A stretch of 64,000 nucleotides of DNA from the NCBI GenBank assembly GCA_965603825.1, contig CBFDEM010000014.1:310001-374000 (forward strand). Reading direction: 5' to 3'. Position 1 is the stretch's first letter, and each line of letters begins with the position of its first letter. The position numbers and the translations under genes were made by a program. Origin of the DNA: Blepharisma stoltei ATCC 30299. Its lineage: Eukaryota > Protista > Ciliophora. The notes below the pieces were generated by a model that made no database searches, was not told the origin of the DNA, and worked only from the letters and a program-made list of their open reading frames with translations. Positions 42,037-64,000 of the stretch are shown piece by piece.

Positions 42037-45000
42037 ATGCGCATAAAGAATGATGAAGGATTAACACAAGAAATCGAAACTTTTGAAAACACAACTAAAA
42101 TTCCTCTCAGAGAAAAATTAAAGCTGGCAATTTTTAGCTATCTTGGTGTGTTATTTAAAGTAAAATACCAAGGCAGCATAGAAGTTAAAACGCAAATATT
42201 TATTGAAGTTATTATCTCAGTGATTATTTCTCTTCAATTGATATTTTTCGCATGATTTCCATCGATGGGAATATCCGGGTGAAATTCCTGTTCAGGGCTG
42301 TGGATCATTGCGGGCTATTTTAACTTTGACTCTATATGTGGGAATAATGGATGAATAAACTATTGTTTTTATGGAACAATATCGGCAATACTTCTTTGTC
42401 TGGGCTGCTTAATTCTTATCGCGTTTTTCCAGTATTTTAAGCACGATATTCCAATTTTAATAGTAAATTTTACTCGGTGAATTGTCAGTGGCTTAACAAC
42501 AATACTATTCATTCCATCAAACTCAATACTTTTTGTTGTATTTAAATATTCCACATTTGATATAGGTGTAATTACAGAGTACACTGGCAATGCAAGTTCA
42601 GATTCGATCAATTATGGAGCTTTCGGGGCTTTTTTATCAATCCTATTTGTGATTTTATTGATGAGTATTGCAATAATAAATGAAATATTGACAAGCGATA
42701 TAAAGCACCACACAGCAAGTAGAAATATTAGATCAAAAGCAAGTTCAAGTTTGATTATACATGGATATTACTTATCAGCACTTTCGGTCTTCTGCTATAC
42801 CATTGTAGGGGTCGATTTAATATTTGAATTCAGGCTTGTTTTGTTTTTGCATATGGTCGCTATTTTTATCAATATTTACAAAAATTTGCCTTGCTATAAT
42901 TACATAGGAAATGTTATGCATGGTTGCAAACTTCTAAGTGTTGCGTGGGTTATGATTGTTTTTGATTTTGGGACCTTACTTGACGATGCGCTGATGATAA
43001 CAATCTTGAATATAATTTTACAGCCTGTAATACTTACCTGCACTGCACTGTTAATTCGCTCTCGTGCATTATCTTTCAAAACCAAAGAGATTCAAGTGTT
43101 GAACCAATATGATTTTGAGCTAAAAATGCGACATATTTTAGGTAATAAAAGTTATGAAAATAAAATTGATATCGTTCATCAATTTTCTTTTTACCAAAAC
43201 AACTATTCATTTTCCTTTGATAGGCTTTTTATAGTTTGGCAAACAAATTATTGCTTTCATATTGTAAAAGATGAAAGCCTTGCTCGAGTAAAGCTGTCAA
43301 AAATTAAGGAATATAGTTGAAGTCTAGAAGGAGAAATTCAAGAATGAAGGATTTACCAAGATTTTGATAAAAATAAAAATAGCACACCTCAAGAATTGAA
43401 GTTTTTAGAGTATTTATTAGATCTGAATAAAATAAAGATCAGAGATGAAAGGCTTTGCTACATTCTCTTTGGAACTGTTAACGAAATAACTTCTAGAAGC
43501 TCAAATGTTAATGCTTTGTACAAAAAAATTTCAATTTTATCAGACAGCATCAATGATCTCGATTCTCTATATAAAAAAATAACAACGAACTGCAAGCATG
43601 CCTATGCTTATGAACTTTATGCATCTTTTCTTCAAACTATAATGCAAAATTCAGATCAGGCGAATTTGATGAGAAGAAGAAAAGAAACTGTTAAATCAAT
43701 CGACCCATTTTTAGATGAAGAAAAAAGGCTTGCTATGTATGATGAGGATAATGGTATGATTTTAATTTCTCTAAACTCAGAATCATTTGGATCAATTTTT
43801 TATATTAACGAAAAAGCTGCTAAACTCCTTGAGACTACTATTACAGATGGGCTTGAAGCTTATCTTTCTGATTTCATCCCTGAGCCTTTTAACATAAATC
43901 ATAATGAGCGTATCAAAAAATTCCTGAAAAATTGTGACAATGTGAATATTGGATTGCCAATGGATTTTTTTCTGATGTCCCGAAAGGGCTATTTAGTGGA
44001 GTGTAATATGTTTGCAAGACTTGCTGCTTTCAAAGACTCAATTTATATTTTATTGTCACTTCGGCCTAAAAAGTTTCATCGAGAGATGGCTTTTATATCA
44101 GAGGAAGGATTCATTTACAACCACACTCAGGAATTTGCAGTACATCTAGGCTATAACTTGTCATCAGTAAAAGGCCAATTTCTATCAAATCTTATTCCTC
44201 ATTTAGATTTATCAAGCATTCCTCCATTTAAAATTATAAGTGTCATATTAAAGAAAAAAGAAATCTTTCTTGTCTATTCAGCAAGACAATGGAGAAACTC
44301 GAAATTCTTTGAAATTTTATTGATAGAAGATGATGAAGAAATTAATTTATGAAAATCTGGTTATCACCCAGAAAAGTGTGATTCTGATAGTCAAGATACC
44401 TCATCTGAAGAAATGGAAAATTATAAGAATGAGCACAACACCTTAAGGATTAATGAAACACAAAATAGTATTTGTTTTGAGGTTGGAGTACCTCTATTTA
44501 AAACTGAACCGAAAAAGCGATTGGATGAAACAGGTATAAACAATATTGATAATAAAAATAGCCCAAATGATGAAAGAATAGATTCTAATCCACAAACTAG
44601 CAGTCAATCTGTCAGCACTAAGCGTAAAATTTAAGTAGACTTTGTCAGAAGAGTCATCCAAGAGTATGAGAAAGCTATAAACATTTTTCAGAAAATTTTA
44701 TTTATTATGGTAAATTCAAATTAGATAATTGCTATCGCTGGGACAAATATTGGAATCTTAATTTATATTTATAAAGAAGTCGATCACACAGCTTCTTTGC
44801 AAATATTTGAAAATGGAGGGCAAATGGTATACGATTTAAGCTCTATTGCTGATACATTAATTTCATTCGAATATCATGTGCAAAGAAATGAGAGTGCGGA
44901 GAATGAAATTGAAGATTTAACTTTAATCTTGGGAGGATTATTGGTTATACAAAATAAACTGTTGAAGGAACTATCTGATTGGGACTATTGCCCTGCTTCA

Positions 45001-52243: not shown

Positions 52244-52638
52244 TTATTTATTGCTTTGAAATCGGCTCTCATTCATTTAGAAGAAATTCAGAAAATTGGA
52301 AAATAACCGAGATTTAATACGAAAATTAGATGGGGACCAGAATACGTGAAATTTTTTATATTAATAATATTTAAGGAATAGAAAAATGAATAAAAATGAT
52401 ATAAATTCACAATAAAAAATTATTTTTTATTTTGAGAAATGATGACCAAATTTAGAGTAAATTTCTTTAATTAAAAATTTTATAAATCTATGCATTTTTA
52501 ATTAAAAAGATATCATTAATGCATTTTTGTAAGAAAAAATATTTTTAAATTGTGTATTATGTAAATCATAAAATTTCTTAATTTCTTTAATTATAATTTG
52601 ATCTATACATAATTTTTCCCATATAGATTGTTTAAAAT

Positions 52639-54036
52639 ATGAAGGAAAATTTGCTGGATGGACAAGAATATGAGCTTAAAAAAGTGATTGGAATTTCATT
52701 TACTGCTAGTATAGGATCATTTCTATTTGGGTATAATATAGGTGTTTTTAATTCAATGCAGCCTAATGTCTCAGCCTCCTTGGATTGAGGAGGAGATGAA
52801 AAGTTATATATTTCTATTATTTCAACTTTGATGCCTTTCGGAGCTCTTTTCGGAGCTATTTATGGAGGTCAAGCAGCAGAAAAACTGGGAAGACGTAAAT
52901 CTATGATTTTTTCAGATATTTTAGTTATTATAGGATCCTTAATTTTTATTTTTCCATCTACCACAACCCTTGGGGTTGGAAGATTCTTCACTGGATTCAC
53001 TTCTGGGATGTTTTCAGTCATTTGTCCTGTATATATCAGTGAATTCTCGCCAACAAAAATAAGCGGGAAAATTGGAAGCTTAGTTCAAATCATGATAAAT
53101 TTAGGGGTATTATTTGCATTTGCAATCGCATTACTATTACCGACAGAGGATTTCGATAAAAACTCATTTAATTGATGGTGACTATTCATGCTTTCCTTGC
53201 AAGGACTCTTTGCATTACTGCAATTATTGCTATTTTTTGTTTGGCTTCGCCATGAAACACCCTATTGGCTACTAAAATTCAATAAAAATGAAGAAGCATT
53301 GAAGTCTTTGTAAGAAATTTATACCAAAAATAGCGCGAAAGAAATTTTTGACAATTTAAAATATAATAAAGCATTGCCAAGTAATAATAAAGACTCAGAT
53401 CCTAGTTATTGGGATCTTTTTACATGCAAAAGGGAGTATTCCAAAGTAATGAGATTAGGAATTATGCTACACTTTTTCCAACAGTGATGCGGTATCAACG
53501 CAATCCAATTTTATTCGACTGGGATATTTAGTTCATTTGGAAAAGGTGAGTTTTTCGCAAGAATCTTAACGCTTGCAATTAAGCTTATAAGTATGATAGG
53601 AGTGGTTTTTGCATTATTATTTGTTGATAGACTTGGGAGAAAGCCGCTATTATATTTTGGCAATATAGGAATGGCTGTGTGCTTATTGCTTATGGGACTC
53701 TTTTCAGAGATCATTGATGGGGGAGTTGTCCCTCCAATAATTTTTATTGCTCTATTTTTGATATTTTATGAAGCATCTGCTGGACCAATTACATGGGTAT
53801 ACTGTGGAGAAATTTTAGATGCAAAGCCTATGAGTGCATGTGTGAGCTCTAATTGGACTTTCAATATTATGGTCGTATTTTTATTTCCTTCTCTATCAAG
53901 TTTATTAGGGATATCAACAGTTTTTTTCATTTATTCAGGTGTCTGCTTTTTAGCTGCCATATATTTTAAGAAAGATTTGACTGAAACAAAAGGAAAGTCA
54001 AAAATTTCAATACAAGAAATGATGAAAAATGCCTAA
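52639..54036 (+). CDS. MFS sugar porter (GLUT-like) containing one in-frame TAA at 53311-53313 (possible pseudogene or null allele)
   Basis: GSFLFGYNIGVFN, EKLGRRKS, PVYISEFSP, HETPYWL, QQWCGINAI, DRLGRKPL, GPITWVYCGE, NWTFN, ETKGKS. Confidence 0.85.
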
Positions 54037-55366: not shown

Positions 55367-58300
55367 TTAAAGATTGCTAATCATATTATAGAAGTAGCCT
55401 CCTTTAGTCATCAAATCTTTTCTGGCTCCTATTTCCAGGATCTTTCCACTTTCTAGTACCATAACTTGATGAGCTTCAGATATTGTTTTAAGACGATGGG
55501 CAATCATTATGCAAGTTTTTCCAGCCATCACTTCTTTAATTGTGGAAAGAAGTGCATCTTCAGTTTTAGGGTCAAGCGCACTTGTTGCTTCATCAAATAT
55601 TAAAATCTTAGGATCTCTTATAATAGCTCTTGCAATAACAATACGTTGTTTTTGCCCCCCGCTTAGCATACTTCCTTTCAATCCTACTTGACGAGCAAAT
55701 GCTTCAGGATATTTAGGATCGTTAATAAATTCGATGGCCTGTGCTTTTTTTGCAGCTTCTTCGACTTGATTTTGTTCAGATTTTATACCATAAGAAATAT
55801 TTTCTGAAATAGATCCAGTAAAGAGCACTGGCTCTTGGCCAACATATCCTATCTGCCTTCTTAAATGCTTAAGGTTATAGGATTTAATATCTAAATCATC
55901 AATTAGCACTGCTCCACTCAAAGGATCATATAGCCTCATTATTAGTTGGATAACAGTTGATTTCCCTGATCCTGTCCTCCCAATCACAGCAAAGTGAGTT
56001 CCAGTTTTGATCTCAAAACTCAGGGATTTCAAAGCCATATAATTTCGATTGGGATAGCAAAAAGTAACATCTTTAAACTCAATTTTACCCTTAATTTCTT
56101 TCTTTTCTCCATCTTTGCTGTTTACATTTATTGTAGGTTGATATTCCAGAATTTTAAACAGTCTTTTTGCAGCCTCAATTCCATTTTTAATATCTGGCAT
56201 ATAAACTCCTGCAATAAGAAAAGAATCTGAGCCAAATTGACAAGTAATAAGCGAAATAATCATGTCTTTATATGTATCGACTCCGTCAAGGACGAGCTTG
56301 GCTCCGTATCAGTAAAGCAGTGCATAAACACAAAAAAGAGCCCCGAATCCTAGCCCATATGTAAAGCCTGATACCTGGGCTTTTTGCTGTAAGCTTGCAA
56401 ATTCAGCTTTAGCAGGCTCTAGATATTTTTCCAGCATGACTTTTTCCAAATTAAATGCTTTTGCTGTTCTATAGTTCATGATAGCGTCTGCAGCTATAGC
56501 AGTGCATGGTTCATAGTTGTATTTAACGACACCTACTTCTTGTGCAAAATAGGATGCGAAAATTGCGATAGAAATAACGGGAAGCACTGATAGAAAAATT
56601 AAGCTCATTCTTCATGAGTAAGCAGCAGCAACTCCATGTGCAACTAATAAAGCAGCAACTATACTTATTATAATTCCTATCATGCTTCCGCTCAATCCAT
56701 TAACTTTTTCACAATCATTGCAAAGTCTTGCGGAAAGAGCGCTACAATTATTTTCAGGTAAATCAAAAAATGCTGCTTCATATTTAAGCAGTGCTTTAAA
56801 GCTTTCTTCTCTCATTTTAGCGGTAATATTTGAACTCATTTTTGGGTAATTGATGCTTTGCATAATTAATCCTATAGCCACAAATAAGGCAAGGAAGCAA
56901 ATCCATCCTCCATATTCTGCACTTTTGCTTAGCATGTCATCATTTTCCTCAGATAAAACAAAAATTTGTTTCCCATTTAGCATACCTGAAATTGGATAAG
57001 ATGATGCAACAAAAAGAGACCCTAAAATGCCAAAATAAAGCCACCGTTTTTCACTTTGCGAAAAATGTAGCATTTTCTTCCTTATATTTTCAGTCTCTTC
57101 CGGCGTGACTTTTCCTTCCTCTCCTTTGATCAATCTATTTCCATCGAAGCCATTAGATACTTCTTTATTTTGCTCATCGTCTCTATTTTTCCGTTGAATT
57201 TTTTGCATTTTTACAAGATGATAGTACTTTGATTTATTCTTCATAAGTTCTTTATGTGTTCCAAACTCTGAAGAAACACCTTGGTCTATCATAATAATAT
57301 AAGTTGAGTCTTTTATTGTGGCTAAATTTTGCGCTATTGTAATTTTTGTGCTTTTTGGTAAGGCTTTATCAATATCTTCTACAACAGCTTGCTCTGTTTG
57401 CCGATCTAATGCACTTGTAGCTTCATCTAATAAAAGAATTTTCGGATTCCTCACAATAGCTCTGGCAATTGCTATTCTTTGCTTTTGGCCTCCAGAAAGC
57501 TGTGAGCCTTTTGATCCAGCTGGAGTTTGGTATTTCAAAGGCAATTTTTTAATAAAATTATGAGCACCAGCCTTTTGAGCAGCAATATGAATTTCTTCCT
57601 CTTTTGCGCTTAATTTTCCATATCTTATATTTTCATAAATGGTAGTGTTAAATAATAATGGTTCTTGACTTACAATTCCAATATGCTCTCTTAAGTAGCT
57701 GATTGAATATTCTCTAATATCATGGTCGTCAATCATGATACTGCCAGAAGTTGGTTCGTAAAATCTTAATAATAGTTGAATTATTGTACTTTTCCCTGAA
57801 CCAGTGCTTCCTACAACTCCTAATTTTTGTCCCGGCTTAAGCTCAAAACTCAGTCCTTTTAGTATTTCTGAGTTCGGAGTTGAAGGATAGCTGAACTTTA
57901 CATTTTTAAAAACAATTTTCCCACAAATTTCAGAGTCTCTTGAACCCTGAATAAGCATACTATTAGTATTTACTATTTCTAATATACGAAATGCTGCAAT
58001 CCTTCCTTGAGTAATTCTTGATATGCCTTATCTTATCCTTAATTATTTCTAATTCCTAAGCCTTAACATCCACTGCCACATCAACTGTGCAAGCTCCTCT
58101 CTTGCTTTAGATTGCTCTGTCCACTTGCTTTGCGCACAGCCTGGTCTTGATCTAAATTTTTGACGGGTGTCTTTCCAATTCTTATTCATTAGTAGTTTAA
58201 AGACCTTTATTGGCCAAAAAATCTATTTGGAATTAAACATCTCTTCAAACATTGTTGGGAGACATAAGGGAATAAATTTTTGAAACAAAAATAAACCTGG

Positions 58301-59532
58301 CTCTCTTAGACAAAATCAATTTGCATCCGTCAAGCACGCTAAAGGCTCCAGCCTCTACTAATGGTGTTGGTTAAACACTTCTCGAATATTCCATTTCCCT
58401 AAGCTATGGTGTCCGAGGTTACCATCATTGCTGGATTAAAATTCGCATGATCAAAATTGGCCAAAGGTGGAATTTCTGCTAGAAAGAACAGAAAATTTTA
58501 ACGACCAGAATTGTGACTATGAGTAATTAGCATGATGCATGGTACACACAACGAAATGTTATCAAAAGCCATCAGACTTACCCACATTACAGTAATAGTT
58601 TTAGTGACATCATATGGCTCATTTAACACCCAATCATATTCATTTTTATTAATAAACCATGCTCCAATTATAAATGCTACTCCATTCATCACTACGAATG
58701 AGCACATTCCAAGTGCTGTCCCAAGGCCTGTTCTTAATCCAGCACTAAACATTGATTTCTGTGATTCTTTAATTGCCTCCAAATATTTTTGTCTTTCGTG
58801 CTTTTGGCCATTAAGGGTTGTTACTGTTTTTATTTCTTCTAAGGCTTCTTCTGCGATCCCACTTGCCTTTTTATAGGAAGTGTCTACAATTTTCGCATTT
58901 TGCTCAAGGCCATTATTTGTCAAAAAAAATCCACCAATAATAGTTGGACAAAAAAGGAGGCAAAATAAGGTCATTTGAGTTCCTTCAATGATAGCAATAA
59001 TAAATGCTGAAAGAATCATTCCAAAAGTATACAATAATATAACTAATTTATCACCTGTAGCCCGCTCAATCATCAAAGTTTCATGAGCTAAGGATTGAGG
59101 AATTTCAGCGACCTGCCTGAGATCAAACCATGAAGGATCGGAATTCATGATCGACTTGAAATATTGCTGACGAAAATAGAAAGCCTGCTTGGCTCCAACG
59201 TTAACAAAACACATGACTGATAAATAGCCTGTCACAGCAAAAATTATTGCACAAGCGACAAGCTCGTAGCAAACAATTTTTGCATTATCATAAAACTCTT
59301 GAACTGACTTATCTCCTTCCATACCACCAAAAAAGCTTCCCATGAAAATATAGAAAAGAGGCTGGACGGCGCCCATTGTTAAAGATGAAAAGCAGCCTAT
59401 AGCTATCAAAAAATAATCAAAAGGTCTAGCATAGGTATAAAGCCCTCTGAAAGAACTCTTTTGATTAGGGCCAGGCTTAGTATCTTTTGAATTAAGTCAA
59501 TCAGCCTCTTCCATGTGTTCAGTTTTTCCCAT
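55367..59532 (-). CDS. ABCB1/MDR-like full ABC transporter (copy A), interrupted by a 512-bp insertion
   Basis: TMD-NBD-TMD-NBD; Walker A GSTGSGKST and GRTGSGKST, LSGGQKQR, DEATSALD. After removing 512 bp the CDS is 3654 nt (1218 codons) and collinear with copy B. Confidence 0.9.
58008..58528. mobile_element. 503-bp insertion flanked by a perfect 9-bp direct repeat TGAGTAATT (IES-like or transposon/retroelement remnant)
   Basis: Repeat copies at 58008-58016 and 58520-58528. Deleting the insert plus one copy yields ..CIMLITQGRIAAF.., matching paralog ..SLKLISMGRVAVY.. with no indel. Confidence 0.85.
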
Positions 59533-60442
59533 TTTCAAATTAATTTCAAAAGGATTTAACTTGAATTATTTTAAGAATAAAATGTAGAGAAAATAAATTT
59601 GAAAATTAAAGGATAAAAAATGCTCTTTTCAAGAGTTATTTCTAATAAGGTTTAATTATCTTTAAATATAAATTATTTGATTCTTAATGCTTAAACCAAG
59701 AAGATCATTTTGATTTTCCATTTAATATGAATCTATATGAAGAATTTTCTTTTTTATTCTGAACCCCAGCATTAACTTATTTCTTCGAGGAGTCAGATTA
59801 ATTTTATCTTGAACGTCCAAAAGTAATTAATTCTAGCCCTAGAGCTCTTTGACCACTTGAATTAAAGTTATTATCTTTCCAATATTCCCAATGAAAATGG
59901 AAGAAACATTAAGATTCACATATCCTAATTGTTGTTCATAATATTAGCCAAAATTCACTTTGCATCATCAAAAAGATAATAAACATTAACTATTATTTCG
60001 AACTTATTTCAACTATATGAATGATAAAAAATTTATTATGAGCTCTAAAGAAAAGCATTTCAGAGTTGTTTCTCATGCTCATTATTAAGCTATTAGCAAT
60101 TTACAATTGATTTAATTTTAACTAGGATATCGTTTTATAATTTTCACCTATCATTTATCTTTTACGAAATTTCATCAAGCAAAATGCCAGGTTTGACTTA
60201 TGTAATTTTTGAAGTTTTGCCCATAGACAATATTGGCATTGTTTGAATACTTCAATAATATCTAGAGTATTTTCTTTTTCAGTTTCTATCTACTAAGCTA
60301 TATGCAACATGAATCAATTTCGTGATAAATTTGAAATTATAAACTAATCCATTAAAAGAATAAGGAACTTTGCTTACTTTAAATATTATTATCAAAAAAA
60401 TTAACACTGAAATGGTAAAAAGCTATTAAATATTATAACTTT

Positions 60443-63400
60443 TTAAAGATTGCTAATCATGTTATAGAAGTAGCCTCCCTGATTCATCAAATCTTCCCTC
60501 GTCCCAATTTCCAGAATTTTCCCACTTTCGAGCACCATAACTTGATGTGCTTCAGAAATTGTCTTGAGTCGATGGGCGATCATGATTACGGTTTTTCCAG
60601 CCATTACTTCTCTAATAGCAGCTAGCAACAATAACTCTGTTTTTGAGTCCAAGGCGCTTGTTGCTTCATCGAATATCAAGATCTTAGGATTCCTGATAAT
60701 TGCTCTTGCGATTGCAATACGCTGCTTTTGTCCACCACTCAGCATGCTTCCTTTTATGCCGACTTGGCGTTCAAAACCTTCTGAGTACTTTGGATCTGTT
60801 ATAAATTCAATTGCTTGAGCTTTTTTCGCTGCTTCTTCTATTTCTTCTTGAGAAGCTTTTATACCATATGCAATATTTTCTGCGATAGTCCCAGTAAAAA
60901 GAACAGGCTCTTGTCCTACAAGTCCAATTTGGCTTCTTAAATGTTTGAGGTTATAGTCTTTAATATCAATGCCATCTATTAAGACCGAACCACTTAATGG
61001 GTCATAAAGTCTTAAAACAAGCTGGGTTACTGTCGATTTCCCTGAACCTGTTCTCCCAATTATTGCAAAATGAGTCCCTGGCTCTATCGTAAAGCTTAAA
61101 GATTTAACAGCCATGTAATTTCGATTTGGGTAGCAAAATACTACGTCTCTAAACTCTATTTTCCCTTCAACTTCTCTTTTCTCCCCATCTTTGCTGTTAA
61201 CATTTATTTTTGGCTGGTATTCTAAAACTTTAAACAGCCTTTTTGCAGCCTCAACTCCATTTTTAACATCTGGAGCATATATTCCAGCTAAGAAAAATGC
61301 ATTTGAGCCAAACATGCAAGTCATCATAGCAATGGTCATATCTTCGTAATTGTCAAGATCTTTAACTACGATATTTCCACCCCACCAGAAAAGCAATGCA
61401 TAAGCACACCAAATCAATCCAAAACCTAAGCCATATGCAATGCCTGAGTTTACTGCTTTTTTGCGAATGCTAGCAAACTCTTGAGCTGCGGGTTCTAAAT
61501 ATTTATCGTGCATGACATTTTCCAAGTTAAAAGCTTTGACAGTTCTATAGTTCATAATAGCATCAGCAGCTTGAGCTGTGCAGGACTCGTAGTTGAATTT
61601 TACTACTCCAACAGATTGAGCCATAAAAGATGCTGCTGTAGCAAAAATGATGATTGGGATGATAGCTAAGAAAACTAAACACATTCTCCATGAATATCCT
61701 GCAGCAACTCCATGGGCCACTGCGAGCGATGTAAGAATCCCAAGCATGATGCCAACAATATGCCCACCCAATCCATTAACTTTTTCACAATCATTGCAAA
61801 GTCTTGCGGAAAGCGCACTGCAGTTGTTTTCAGGAAGATCAAAAAATGCTGCTTCATATTTAAGAAGTGCTTTAAAGCTTGCTTCTCTCATTTTCGCCGT
61901 GATATTTGCACTCATTTTTGGATAACTGACTGATTCGAAAATCAGTCCAAGTGATACAAAAAATGCTAATAAGAAGATGTAGCCTGCATATTCAGAACTT
62001 TTGGCAATCATGTCGCTATCCTTAAGAGCAAGCACAAACATCTCTTTTCCACTAAACATTCCTACAAGAGGATATCCAGCTCCCACCAGCATTGATCCAG
62101 CCATTCCTAAATAAAGCCATCCCCTTTCACTTTTGCTCATAAGCATCATTTTTTTCTTGACATTTCCTGCATCATACTCTTTTTTAGCTTGTTCCTCTTC
62201 TTTAGTTTTTTTTACTTCGAGATCAGTTGCTTTTGCTTGAGCTTGTTCATCATCTTCATTTTTTTGCTGAATTTTTTGCATTTTGATGAGATGGTAGTAT
62301 TTCGATTTATTTTTCATTAACTGCTTATGATTGCCAAATTCCAGTACAACTCCTTGGTCAATCATGATAATAAAATTTGATTCTTTTATTGTGAGTAAAT
62401 TCTGAGCAATCGTAATTCTTGTGCTTTTTGGCATAGCTTTATCGATGGCTTCAACGACAGCTTGCTCAGTTTGCCTGTCTAAAGCACTTGTTGCTTCGTC
62501 TAATAAGAGAATTTTTGGGTTTCTAATTATAGCTCTTGCAATAGCAATTCTTTGCTTCTGCCCTCCAGACAGCTGAGACCCTTTAGTTCCTGCAGGAGTC
62601 TTATATTTATCTGGTAAGGCTGAAATAAAGTCATGCGCCCCTGCTTCTCGCGCTGCAAATTCTATTTCTTCTTCAGTGGCATTTAATTTTCCATACCTAA
62701 TATTATCAAAAATGCTAGCATTAAAAAGTAATGGCTCTTGGCTCACAAGCCCAATATGTTCTCTTAAAAAACTAATTGAATAGTCCATGATATTGTATCC
62801 ATCTATTGTAATAGTTCCAGAAGAAGGTTCATAATATCTAAGTAGAAGCTGAATTATAGTACTTTTTCCTGATCCAGTACTTCCAACAACTCCAAGCCTC
62901 TGTCCTGGTTCTAAATCAAAGCTAAGTCCTTTAAGAATTTCTGAGTTAGGCGCTGATGGATAAGAGAACCTAACATCTTTAAATGAAACGGCACCTTCAA
63001 TATCGCTTTTTCGGGTTCCTTGGGTAAGTTTTGATTTTCCGTTAATAATTTCTGAAATATTATAAACGGCCACTCTCCCCATACTGATAAGTTTGAGGCT
63101 AGGAACACAAAGAGAAATGTTATTGAAGGCCATAAGACTCACCCACATAACTGTGATGACTCTTGTTAAATCATATTCCTCCCCGCCAGCCCAATTGTCC
63201 TCTCCTTTATCTATAAACCAAGCTCCAACAATATAAGTAACCCCATTCATGACCATAAAAGAACACATGCCCAACGCAGTGCCTCCTCCAACCTTCAGTC
63301 CACTAAGAAGCATGGATTTTTGTGAATCTTTTATAGACTCAGTATATTTTTTGGCTTCATGTCTCTGCCCATTTAGCGAGGATACAGTTTTGATTTCTTG

Positions 63401-64000
63401 CAAAGCTTCTTCAGCGATACCTCCTGCAAGTTTATAAGAAGTATCAGCTATTTTGGCACTTTGCTCAAGTCCCTTATGAGTTAGCATGAATCCCAATGTG
63501 ACAGCTGGCATGAAAACTAAGCAAAATAATGCTAACTGAAGGCCCATGATAATAGCAATAATGAGAGAAGATACTATCATGCTTGTGCCCATAATTAAAA
63601 CAATCAGTTTGTCCCCTGTGGCTCTTTCGATCATTAAAGTTTCCGTTGCTAAGGATTGGGGAAGTTCGGCAACATGTCTGAGGTCAAATCATGATGGATC
63701 TCCATTGATTATCGCTTTGAAATAGTGATTTCGGAAGTGGAAAGCTTGTCTCGCGCCAACGTTCACAAAGCACATAACTGCAAGTGTTCCGGCAACAGTA
63801 AACACAAAGGCACATCCGATAAGCTCATAGCAGACAATTTTTGCCGAGTCATAAAATGAGTCCTTTGAGGTGTTCGCATCCATGCTCCCAAAGAAATCTC
63901 CCATAAATAAGAAGAAAAGGGGCTGGATCGCTCCTAAGGCAGCAGCAGAGATGAAGCCAACCACAATAAGGAAATAATCTAAGCAGGTGGCATACTTGTA
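60443..64000 (-). CDS. ABCB1/MDR-like full ABC transporter (copy B; 5' end outside window)
   Basis: 1063-aa ORF joined to ORF 63689-63964 by TGA=Trp (GDPS-W-FDLR; TGG in copy A); tandem paralog of copy A. Confidence 0.95.

What the first reader, a model, noticed from the sequence alone, without database searches (positions are those of the whole stretch)
58008..58528. 512-bp precisely removable insertion with a 9-bp TA-containing direct repeat inside an ABCB gene
Seen: copy A runs into a stop (..MLITHSHNSGR*) and resumes 512 bp later in another frame. Both junctions carry TGAGTAATT (58008-58016, 58520-58528), and the flanking bases differ. Removing one repeat plus the 503-bp core restores LITQGRIA exactly opposite LISMGRVA of the tandem paralog, and the rest of the gene shows no other disablement. 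Established: ciliate IESs are excised leaving one copy of a terminal direct repeat, usually TA-containing, and insertions of non-LTR retroelements and Mutator-type transposons create target-site duplications of about this size. Inference: a mobile element whose target-site duplication could double as an excision pointer, retained in (or incompletely removed from) this assembly. Partial excision would leave functional and disrupted copies of a drug-efflux pump coexisting in the polyploid macronucleus.
Basis: partly seen in the sequence, partly recalled or inferred. Interest (0 to 1): 0.85.

Follow-up and report, generated by a model that had tools for sequence, protein, structure and literature searches.

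The report
Young orphan insertion splitting an ABCB gene
A 503-bp piece of otherwise unknown DNA, flanked by a perfect 9-bp duplication of its target, sits in the somatic genome of the ciliate Blepharisma stoltei and cuts one of eight drug-pump-type ABC transporter genes in two; it looks like a young germline-style insertion that the cell did not remove, but whether any copies remove it could not be tested.

Summary
TGAGTAATT stands at 58008-58016 and 58520-58528. Removing 512 bp joins two minus-strand ORFs into a 1228-codon ABCB reading frame that aligns without a gap to seven intact paralogs across the junction.

The genome is the Blepharisma stoltei ATCC 30299 macronuclear assembly (41.46 Mb, 64 contigs, TGA = Trp).

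The insert is real but is not a recognisable mobile element:
- It is single copy in the somatic genome.
- It has no terminal inverted repeats, poly-A or LINE tail, no ORF and no RNA family match.
- It cannot be a GT-AG intron.

About 120 nt of it is an 84%-identical copy of part of a TBC/RabGAP gene on another contig, including a relic of that gene's 15-nt intron. The rest matches nothing.

The host gene has no other stop or frameshift and shows dN/dS 0.08 against its closest paralog. So either the insertion is very young, or it has been removable.

Public gene models already split the gene into 344-aa and 863-aa products.

Other readers of this scan noted similar IES-like or duplication-flanked inserts elsewhere in this genome.

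My verdict is a young, IES-like, unexcised insertion, of modest interest.

The parts
58008..58016 (.). Left copy (+ strand coordinates) of the 9-bp direct repeat TGAGTAATT. On the gene's strand it reads AATTACTCA and lies at the downstream junction.
   Evidence: D7. It is the only run of 9 or more at spacing 512 in the window.
58017..58519 (-). 503-bp insert core. It is orphan DNA with GC about 0.37. It has no TIR, tail, ORF of note or RNA family match, and is single copy in the somatic assembly.
   Evidence: unique; no TIR; no LINE similarity; no Rfam, tRNA or tandem repeat; composition.
58520..58528 (.). Right copy of the 9-bp direct repeat. On the gene's strand it supplies codons (C)TA ATT ACT CA of L-I-T-(Q/H).
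58185..58303 (-). TBC/RabGAP-derived patch inside the insert. It is about 120 nt, 84% identical to G000:C58:644500-644631 (L002:1500-1632) with one 11-nt gap, and lies in the same sense as the ABCB gene.
   Evidence: The C58 locus matches Pfam PF00566. The insert's flanks do not align to the TBC gene's flanks.
58223..58238 (-). Degenerate relic (GTTTAATTCCAAATAG, 16 nt) of the TBC gene's 15-nt intron GTAAATTCCAAATAG. It shows that the copied material was genomic DNA or unspliced RNA, not mature mRNA.
   Evidence: Introns of 15-16 bp are the rule in this species (PMC9942806).
58498..59532 (-). Upstream gene fragment: transmembrane domain 1 of the ABCB gene plus 7 insert-encoded residues (HSHNSGR) and a TAA stop. 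It equals the public 344-aa gene model P0121.
   Evidence: Pfam PF00664.
55367..57958 (-). Downstream gene fragment: NBD1-TMD2-NBD2, equal to the public 863-aa gene model P0140, which starts at MLIQGSRD. Both Walker A and B motifs and both LSGGQ signatures are intact.
60446..64000 (-). Tandem paralog B, intact, which runs on to 64099 beyond the window. It is 69% identical in protein to the joined gene. A third tandem copy, C, follows it.

Best explanation
This is a real, evolutionarily young insertion of 503 bp of non-transposon DNA into ABCB paralog A of Blepharisma stoltei. It was made at a 9-nt staggered break, so the target TGAGTAATT was duplicated. The site is the linker between transmembrane domain 1 and nucleotide-binding domain 1.

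The inserted DNA is a mosaic. About 120 nt descend from a TBC/RabGAP gene, copied as genomic DNA with its tiny intron. The rest is orphan sequence. No donor exists in the somatic genome, so the DNA most likely came from germline-limited sequence (inference).

In anatomy it is IES-like: intragenic, bounded by a TA-containing direct repeat, and precisely removable. Yet it is kept in the consensus of the HiFi somatic assembly. Insert-bearing copies therefore encode a TMD1-only stub (344 aa) and, at best, an N-terminally truncated 863-aa product. The pump is disabled in those copies, and seven intact paralogs provide redundancy.

Shown: the anatomy, uniqueness, lack of transposon hallmarks, TBC homology, intactness and purifying selection of the host gene, and the split annotation.

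Inferred: youth, a germline-limited donor, and majority retention in the macronucleus.
For: Repeat and frame restoration.

Species and assembly: the 41,464,486 bases in 64 contigs match the 64 telomere-to-telomere HiFi/Flye contigs of strain ATCC 30299, which uses UGA = Trp and is virtually homozygous (PMC9942806). The C12 paralog is named Blepharisma stoltei in the database.

Single copy and orphan.

TBC patch with intron relic. Homology stops at both sides.

No TIR. No LINE similarity: the LINE tail is (TAATCC)n and is absent from the insert. No Rfam, tRNA or tandem repeat.

Host gene: no stop in 1228 codons and all ATPase motifs intact. dN/dS against the closest paralog C12 is 0.076.

Dating argument: 3.8% of single-base changes would create a stop. 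A neutrally drifting gene would have P(no stop) = 0.06 at 2% divergence, and about 22 stops at the 16% divergence that separates the TBC patch from its nearest somatic relative. That 16% therefore did not accumulate after an inactivating insertion.

Public models split the gene into P0121 (344 aa) and P0140 (863 aa).

Background from PMC9942856: three quarters of IESs are TA-bound. True IESs are efficiently excised, with retention of 0.02 or less. The authors conjecture that foreign DNA lacking good excisase sites may fail to be excised and would be deleterious inside genes.
Against: No reads could be examined, so the share of macronuclear copies that carry the insert is only inferred from its presence in a majority-rule HiFi assembly.

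The germline state is unknown. The donor was not found, so 'germline-limited origin' is an argument from absence in one assembly.

A perfectly intact host gene is equally what a still-functional, excisable IES would give.

Gene A carries more lineage-specific amino-acid changes than its sister C12: 109 against 64 (chi-square 11.7), and 31 against 10 at otherwise invariant columns. This could mean some relaxation that predates the insertion.

No enzyme is identified for the 9-nt stagger.
Confidence: 0.55

Rival explanations
1. Partially excised IES. The insert is present in the germline and is removed from a fraction of macronuclear copies by cutting at the TA inside the 9-bp repeat. Intact and disrupted pump genes would then coexist in the polyploid macronucleus, and the gene would stay under selection.
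For: It has a TA-containing direct repeat, is intragenic, and precise removal restores the frame. The host gene is fully intact with dN/dS 0.08. The species shows a continuum of retention and about 10,000 low-frequency deletions relative to the MAC reference (PMC9942856). An earlier follow-up in this genome reported a long-repeat insert that another strain lacks exactly (s1-629530; not checked here).
Against: The consensus assembly and both public gene models carry the insert. True IESs in this strain are retained at 0.02 or less. No insert-free protein or junction was found anywhere. A 9-bp repeat is far longer than the 2-4-bp TA/TAT/TATA repeats typical of the excisase. There are no IES-type inverted ends.
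Confidence: 0.25
2. Old, normally well-excised IES whose excision lapsed recently in this clonal line, for example by maternal (scan-RNA) inheritance of retention as known for some Paramecium IESs (from memory). The gene was functional until the last sexual generation.
For: This explains the decayed 84% TBC patch together with an intact host gene. The orphan sequence is what an old germline-limited segment would look like.
Against: An old IES needs only its TA. A perfect 9/9 repeat is expected only up to roughly 5-8% neutral divergence of the internal copy. None of the seven paralogs, nor the related species' gene, has anything at this site. Uniform decay cannot give 84% identity in 120 nt and no similarity in the flanks.
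Confidence: 0.1
3. Non-autonomous transposon or retroposed copy whose relatives are confined to the germline. Examples would be a Mutator-type element (9-bp duplications) or a sequence inserted by the resident APE-type LINE machinery.
For: A 9-bp duplication fits the Mutator size class (own knowledge). The somatic genome encodes development-induced MULE-domain proteins and recently active LINEs with copies 99.6-99.97% identical (PMC9942806). Other first-reader notes list many duplication-flanked inserts in this genome (unchecked).
Against: There are no inverted ends, no LINE 3' tail or similarity and no poly-A. An intron relic is retained. There is no second copy in 41 Mb.
Confidence: 0.1
4. 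Assembly artefact or a long unconventional intron.
For: None was found. It is listed for completeness.
Against: A chimeric join would not create an exact 9-bp target duplication around unique DNA. The assembly is HiFi-based and the strain is nearly homozygous. No choice of boundary within the repeat gives GT...AG or AT...AC ends, and introns here are 15-16 bp.
Confidence: 0.03

Closest known systems
Internally eliminated sequences (IESs) of Blepharisma and Paramecium, including partially retained and 'cryptic' ones (PMC9942856)
   Same: It is intragenic and bounded by a direct repeat that contains TA. One repeat copy would remain after removal, and removal restores the reading frame. Its GC content is close to the genome average.
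   Different: It is present in the somatic consensus assembly and in the gene models. Its repeat is 9 bp rather than 2-4 bp of alternating T and A. It has no inverted ends, its 512-bp length is outside the described size peaks, and excision was not shown.
Mutator/MULE elements, including gene-fragment-carrying Pack-MULEs of plants (own knowledge)
   Same: It has a 9-bp target-site duplication and carries a fragment of a cellular gene.
   Different: It has no terminal inverted repeats, no family of copies and no transposase. Only 120 of its 503 nt are gene-derived.
Insertions made by the resident APE-type non-LTR retrotransposons (LINE/RTE-X) of B. stoltei (PMC9942856, PMC9942806)
   Same: It is flanked by a target duplication of variable-length type, in a genome where such elements were recently active in somatic-type DNA.
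   Different: It has no (TAATCC)n tail and no similarity to the LINE. It retains an intron relic, and no transcribed donor exists in the macronucleus.
Filler or captured DNA at repaired double-strand breaks, such as organelle or genomic fragments captured by end joining (own knowledge)
   Same: It is a single-copy, mosaic, non-mobile sequence of endogenous origin inserted once.
   Different: End-joining capture normally leaves microhomology or small deletions, not a clean 9-bp duplication. The captured pieces are not identical to any present somatic locus.

Membership tests
Ciliate IES (Blepharisma type) | Present in germline DNA and absent from mature macronuclear DNA | tested here: not met
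   The insert is in the MAC assembly and no insert-free junction exists there. Both public gene models are split by it. The germline state and the read-level fraction could not be examined.
Ciliate IES (Blepharisma type) | Bounded by a terminal direct repeat, usually containing TA | tested here: met
   TGAGTAATT occurs twice and contains TA. It is much longer than the common TA/TAT/TATA repeats.
Ciliate IES (Blepharisma type) | Precise excision leaves one repeat and restores the gene | tested here: inconclusive
   In silico removal restores a frame collinear with seven paralogs. No molecule with the excised form was seen.
Ciliate IES (Blepharisma type) | Targeted by development-specific small RNAs | not testable with these tools
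   No small-RNA data were reachable.
Cut-and-paste DNA transposon or MITE (Mutator/MULE, Tc1/Pogo) | Terminal inverted repeats | tested here: not met
   Aligning the 60-nt ends scores 8, against a shuffled mean of 8.7. The repeat finder shows no terminal pair.
Cut-and-paste DNA transposon or MITE (Mutator/MULE, Tc1/Pogo) | Multiple related copies in the genome | tested here: not met
   Only the self hit, plus a 105-nt gene-derived match, in the somatic assembly. Germline-limited DNA was not searchable.
Cut-and-paste DNA transposon or MITE (Mutator/MULE, Tc1/Pogo) | Target-site duplication of family-specific length (9-11 bp for Mutator) | tested here: met
   A perfect 9-bp duplication.
Non-LTR retroelement or retrocopy | 3' tail (poly-A or the LINE's own repeat) next to the duplication, and similarity to the LINE 3' end | tested here: not met
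   The resident LINE ends in (TAATCC)n. The insert has neither that tail nor significant similarity.
Non-LTR retroelement or retrocopy | Intron-less copy of a transcribed donor gene | tested here: not met
   An intron relic is retained. The nearest gene is only 84% identical over about 120 nt.
Spliceosomal intron | GT-AG (or AT-AC) boundaries and species-typical length | tested here: not met
   No boundary choice within the repeat gives canonical ends. Introns here are 15-16 bp.
ABCB full transporter (host gene) | TMD-NBD-TMD-NBD architecture with Walker A, Walker B and signature motifs | tested here: met
   Pfam PF00664 and PF00005 are recorded on the two models. Motifs lie at ORF residues 415/1025, 543/1154 and 519/1130.

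The most novel reading that the evidence does not exclude
The insert is a newborn IES caught at birth. A fragment of germline-limited DNA, freed or transcribed during macronuclear development, was re-integrated at a 9-nt staggered cut. A domesticated MULE-type transposase or the LINE endonuclease could have made that cut. Because the fragment matches germline-limited sequence it is marked by scan RNAs, and it is now excised inefficiently at the TA of its own target duplication. Working and broken copies of the pump gene would then coexist and could be sorted by amitosis.
Probability: 0.12. Interest if true: 0.7.

Novelty: new member of a known kind. Interest (0 to 1): 0.35.

Why it matters
How new IESs arise, and what happens to DNA that enters a ciliate gene without good excisase sites, are open questions. 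The authors of the Blepharisma germline paper conjecture that such DNA would be poorly excised and deleterious.

This locus is a clean test case, for four reasons:
- It is single copy.
- Its borders are exactly defined.
- It has a non-transposon origin.
- Its host gene is otherwise intact and its frame gives a yes/no read-out.

If reads show only the insert-bearing form, this is simply a very young insertional pseudogene in a redundant eight-member ABCB family. That would be ordinary.

Tried and rejected
I did not resend the stretch or use run accessions from the paper in read laying. No read-level evidence exists in this report.

Contig look-ups. Look-ups of the window's own proteins are withheld.

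Protein searches for an insert-free version. I used a 448-aa NBD1 piece (range 246-784 aa), a 293-aa TMD1 piece, and a 711-aa piece of the closest paralog (range 391-1244 aa). They returned only the two split models and paralogs. No intact copy appeared from B. stoltei, B. japonicum (MMETSP, 97% identical for another paralog) or other Blepharisma.

Pattern search. The joined junction does not occur in the genome (0 hits).

Donor search. DNA searches of the whole insert and of both flanks, and protein searches of two stop-free insert ORFs, gave nothing beyond the TBC patch. Permissive alignment of the insert flanks to the TBC gene flanks gave scores at the shuffle level.

Other feature searches. 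Searches for TIRs, LINE tail or body similarity, Rfam families, tRNAs and tandem repeats were all negative.

Window-wide scan for other frame-restoring removable segments. It was too permissive to be useful. Short repeats join many unrelated ORFs, so I did not scale it up.

Rejected readings. I rejected an intron (wrong ends and size), a processed retrocopy (intron relic, no tail, no donor), a heterozygous allele as the main explanation (the strain has only 1,277 heterozygous SNPs), and post-insertion decay as the cause of the 16% TBC divergence.
Full report
**Identity of the sequence.**
The window is G000:C14:310001-374000 of a 41,464,486-base genome in 64 contigs. This matches the Blepharisma stoltei ATCC 30299 macronuclear (MAC) assembly. 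That assembly has 64 telomere-to-telomere contigs, built from PacBio HiFi reads with Flye. It is 33.5% GC, uses UGA = Trp, and has introns of 15-16 bp. The strain is virtually homozygous, with 1,277 heterozygous SNPs (PMC9942806; PMC9942856). A paralog fetched from the genome is 100% identical to a database protein named 'unnamed protein product [Blepharisma stoltei]'. I translated all reading frames with TGA = Trp (table 4).

**The observation.**
TGAGTAATT stands at 58008-58016 and again at 58520-58528.

The gene lies on the minus strand. Its upstream ORF (59565-58501) ends ...CIMLITHSHNSGR followed by TAA. A second ORF of 886 codons (58027-55370) follows in another frame.

Deleting one repeat plus the 503-bp core yields a 1228-codon frame without a stop. 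I aligned it with seven intact relatives:
- the two tandem copies B and C on the same contig;
- copies on contigs 12, 29, 43 and 21;
- the gene of a second Blepharisma species (Logan contig L033).

The junction region ...SLCVPCIMLITQGRIAAFRILEIVN... aligns without any gap.

A 9-bp exact repeat at this spacing is unique in the window. It is expected about 1.3e-5 times per position.

Being able to join two ORFs through a short repeat is by itself nearly worthless as evidence. A scan found dozens of chance cases with 6-8-bp repeats. The homology across the junction and the length of the repeat are what count.

**The host gene.**
The joined product is a full ABCB transporter (TMD-NBD-TMD-NBD). Both Walker A motifs, both Walker B motifs and both LSGGQ signatures are present. 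The insert sits in the linker between TMD1 and NBD1.

The family has at least eight full-length members. The closest to gene A is on contig 12 (77.7% protein identity), not the tandem neighbour B (69%).

Against the contig-12 copy, dN = 0.131, dS = 1.7 and dN/dS = 0.076.

Gene A has somewhat more private amino-acid changes than its sister:
- 109 against 64, chi-square 11.7;
- 31 against 10 at columns invariant in all the others, mostly conservative changes.

This is mild relaxation, not decay.

Public gene models already treat the locus as two genes. P0121 (344 aa) ends in ...LITHSHNSGR. P0140 (863 aa) starts at MLIQGSRD, 17 residues past the junction.

**The insert.**
It is not a member of any repeat family in the somatic genome. 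The whole insert and each flank separately hit only themselves. Two stop-free insert ORFs hit nothing at protein level.

It lacks the hallmarks I tested for:
- There are no terminal inverted repeats.
- There are no tandem repeats, tRNA-like parts or Rfam matches.
- There is no poly-A at either end.
- It resembles neither the body nor the (TAATCC)n tail of the resident, recently amplified LINE family, whose copies are 99.6-99.97% identical.
- No boundary within the repeat gives GT...AG ends, so it is not an intron.

The one recognisable component is a stretch of about 120 nt (58185-58303, same sense as the ABCB gene). It is 84% identical, with one 11-nt gap, to the TBC-domain region of a RabGAP gene on contig 58. 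The match runs through that gene's 15-nt intron GTAAATTCCAAATAG, which survives in the insert as GTTTAATTCCAAATAG. The material was therefore copied as genomic DNA or unspliced RNA.

Homology ends on both sides. The remaining roughly 215 and 170 nt do not align to the TBC gene's flanks better than shuffled sequence does. The conserved YxQGMNE motif just upstream in the TBC gene is absent. The insert is therefore a mosaic of one gene-derived patch and orphan DNA.

**Dating and origin (inference).**
In gene A, 3.8% of all possible single-base changes create a TAA or TAG stop. If the gene had drifted neutrally since an inactivating insertion, the chance of seeing no stop would be 0.25 at 1% divergence and 0.06 at 2%. 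At 16% divergence about 22 stops are expected.

The 16% difference between the TBC patch and its nearest somatic relative therefore cannot have arisen after an inactivating insertion. Two readings remain:
- The insertion is very young and its donor was already a diverged sequence that is not in the somatic genome. Germline-limited DNA is the obvious candidate.
- The insert is older but the gene stayed under selection because the insert was removed, which would make it a working IES.

The perfect 9/9 repeat favours youth but only weakly. The internal copy would stay intact with probability 0.63 even at 5% divergence.

**How it works.**
In insert-bearing DNA, translation of the ABCB message stops seven codons into the insert. 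This gives a TMD1-only stub. The rest of the protein could be made only from an internal start at Met-366 of the ORF, and only if a transcript began inside the insert. No full transporter can be produced.

The insert is in the consensus of a HiFi assembly of a nearly homozygous strain, and normal IESs in this strain are retained at 0.02 or less. From this I infer that most macronuclear copies carry it.

This fits a conjecture by the authors of the germline paper. They suggest that DNA lacking good excisase sites may be marked yet fail to be excised, or be excised only partly, and would be deleterious inside genes. Seven intact paralogs would cushion the loss.

**What could not be tested.**
That needs reads. 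Contigs of this genome are withheld from the contig look-up.

Indirect searches all came back empty:
- for an intact protein, in length ranges 246-784 aa and 391-1244 aa;
- for the joined junction in the assembly;
- for an ortholog transcript in the closely related B. japonicum MMETSP data.

An empty result shows nothing, given how little of that material the tools could reach.

**Context from the scan.**
Other first-stage notes on this genome list many TA-bounded, IES-like inserts, and inserts with duplications of 7-16 bp. Two follow-ups concluded 'retained IES-like inserts', and one of those inserts is absent exactly in another strain. I did not check those notes. They suggest this locus belongs to a recurring class in this assembly rather than being a singular event. 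One of them (a LINE tail motif) prompted the LINE comparison, which was negative here.

**Verdict.**

The best reading (0.55) is a young, single-copy, IES-like insertion of probably germline-limited DNA that the macronucleus keeps, making a fresh insertional null allele of a redundant ABCB gene. A partially excised IES remains a live rival (0.25).

This is a new member of a known kind. Its interest is modest unless reads show coexisting forms.

Noticed in passing
window 55370-64000 and L040 (G000:C14:374001-379061): Three ABCB genes stand in tandem on the minus strand (A, B and C). B and C are 94% identical in protein (dN 0.025, dS 0.138), so they are a recent duplication. A's closest relative is instead on contig 12 (77.7%).
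   Followed up: partly
window about 56800 (NBD1 of gene A), and the same column in all paralogs and in L033: The H-loop position of NBD1 reads IAQNL, whereas NBD2 keeps IAHRL. This holds in every family member I looked at, which suggests a family-wide degenerate first ATP site. I saw it by eye in the translations only.
   Followed up: no
L061-L064 (G000:C30:284609-288370, C37:130470-134231, C39:571651-575412, C40:707743-711504): Four LINE copies are 99.6-99.97% identical over about 3.48 kb. They end in a variable (TAATCC)n-like tail, after which the flanks differ. This is consistent with very recent retrotransposition in somatic-type DNA.
   Followed up: partly
protein database rows for P0121, P0125, P0140, P0124, P0126 and P0127: Each B. 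stoltei protein is recorded on two contigs. The longer contig is 1.30-1.39 times the length of the MAC contig (for example 1,050,698 against 807,156 for C14). This is probably the published MAC+IES hybrid assembly, and it could not be fetched.
   Followed up: no
window 53309-53332 (+): The two halves of a sugar/MFS-type transporter ORF (52636-53310 and 53314-54033) are in one frame, separated by a single TAA. The TAA lies inside GTAAG...AATAG, about 24 nt, which is probably a short in-frame intron rather than a break.
   Followed up: no
window 44707-44724 (+): The gene starting near 44707 seems to have a canonical 15-nt intron (GTAAATTCAAATTAG) immediately after its ATG.
   Followed up: no
L033 (Logan contig of SRR24908292, 9113-12766): A second Blepharisma-like species (TGA = Trp) has a single ABCB gene, 77% identical to copy B, flanked by different genes (short-chain dehydrogenase, ATP11, kinase, DHFR-TS). 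The tandem array therefore seems specific to the B. stoltei lineage or lies at another locus.
   Followed up: partly
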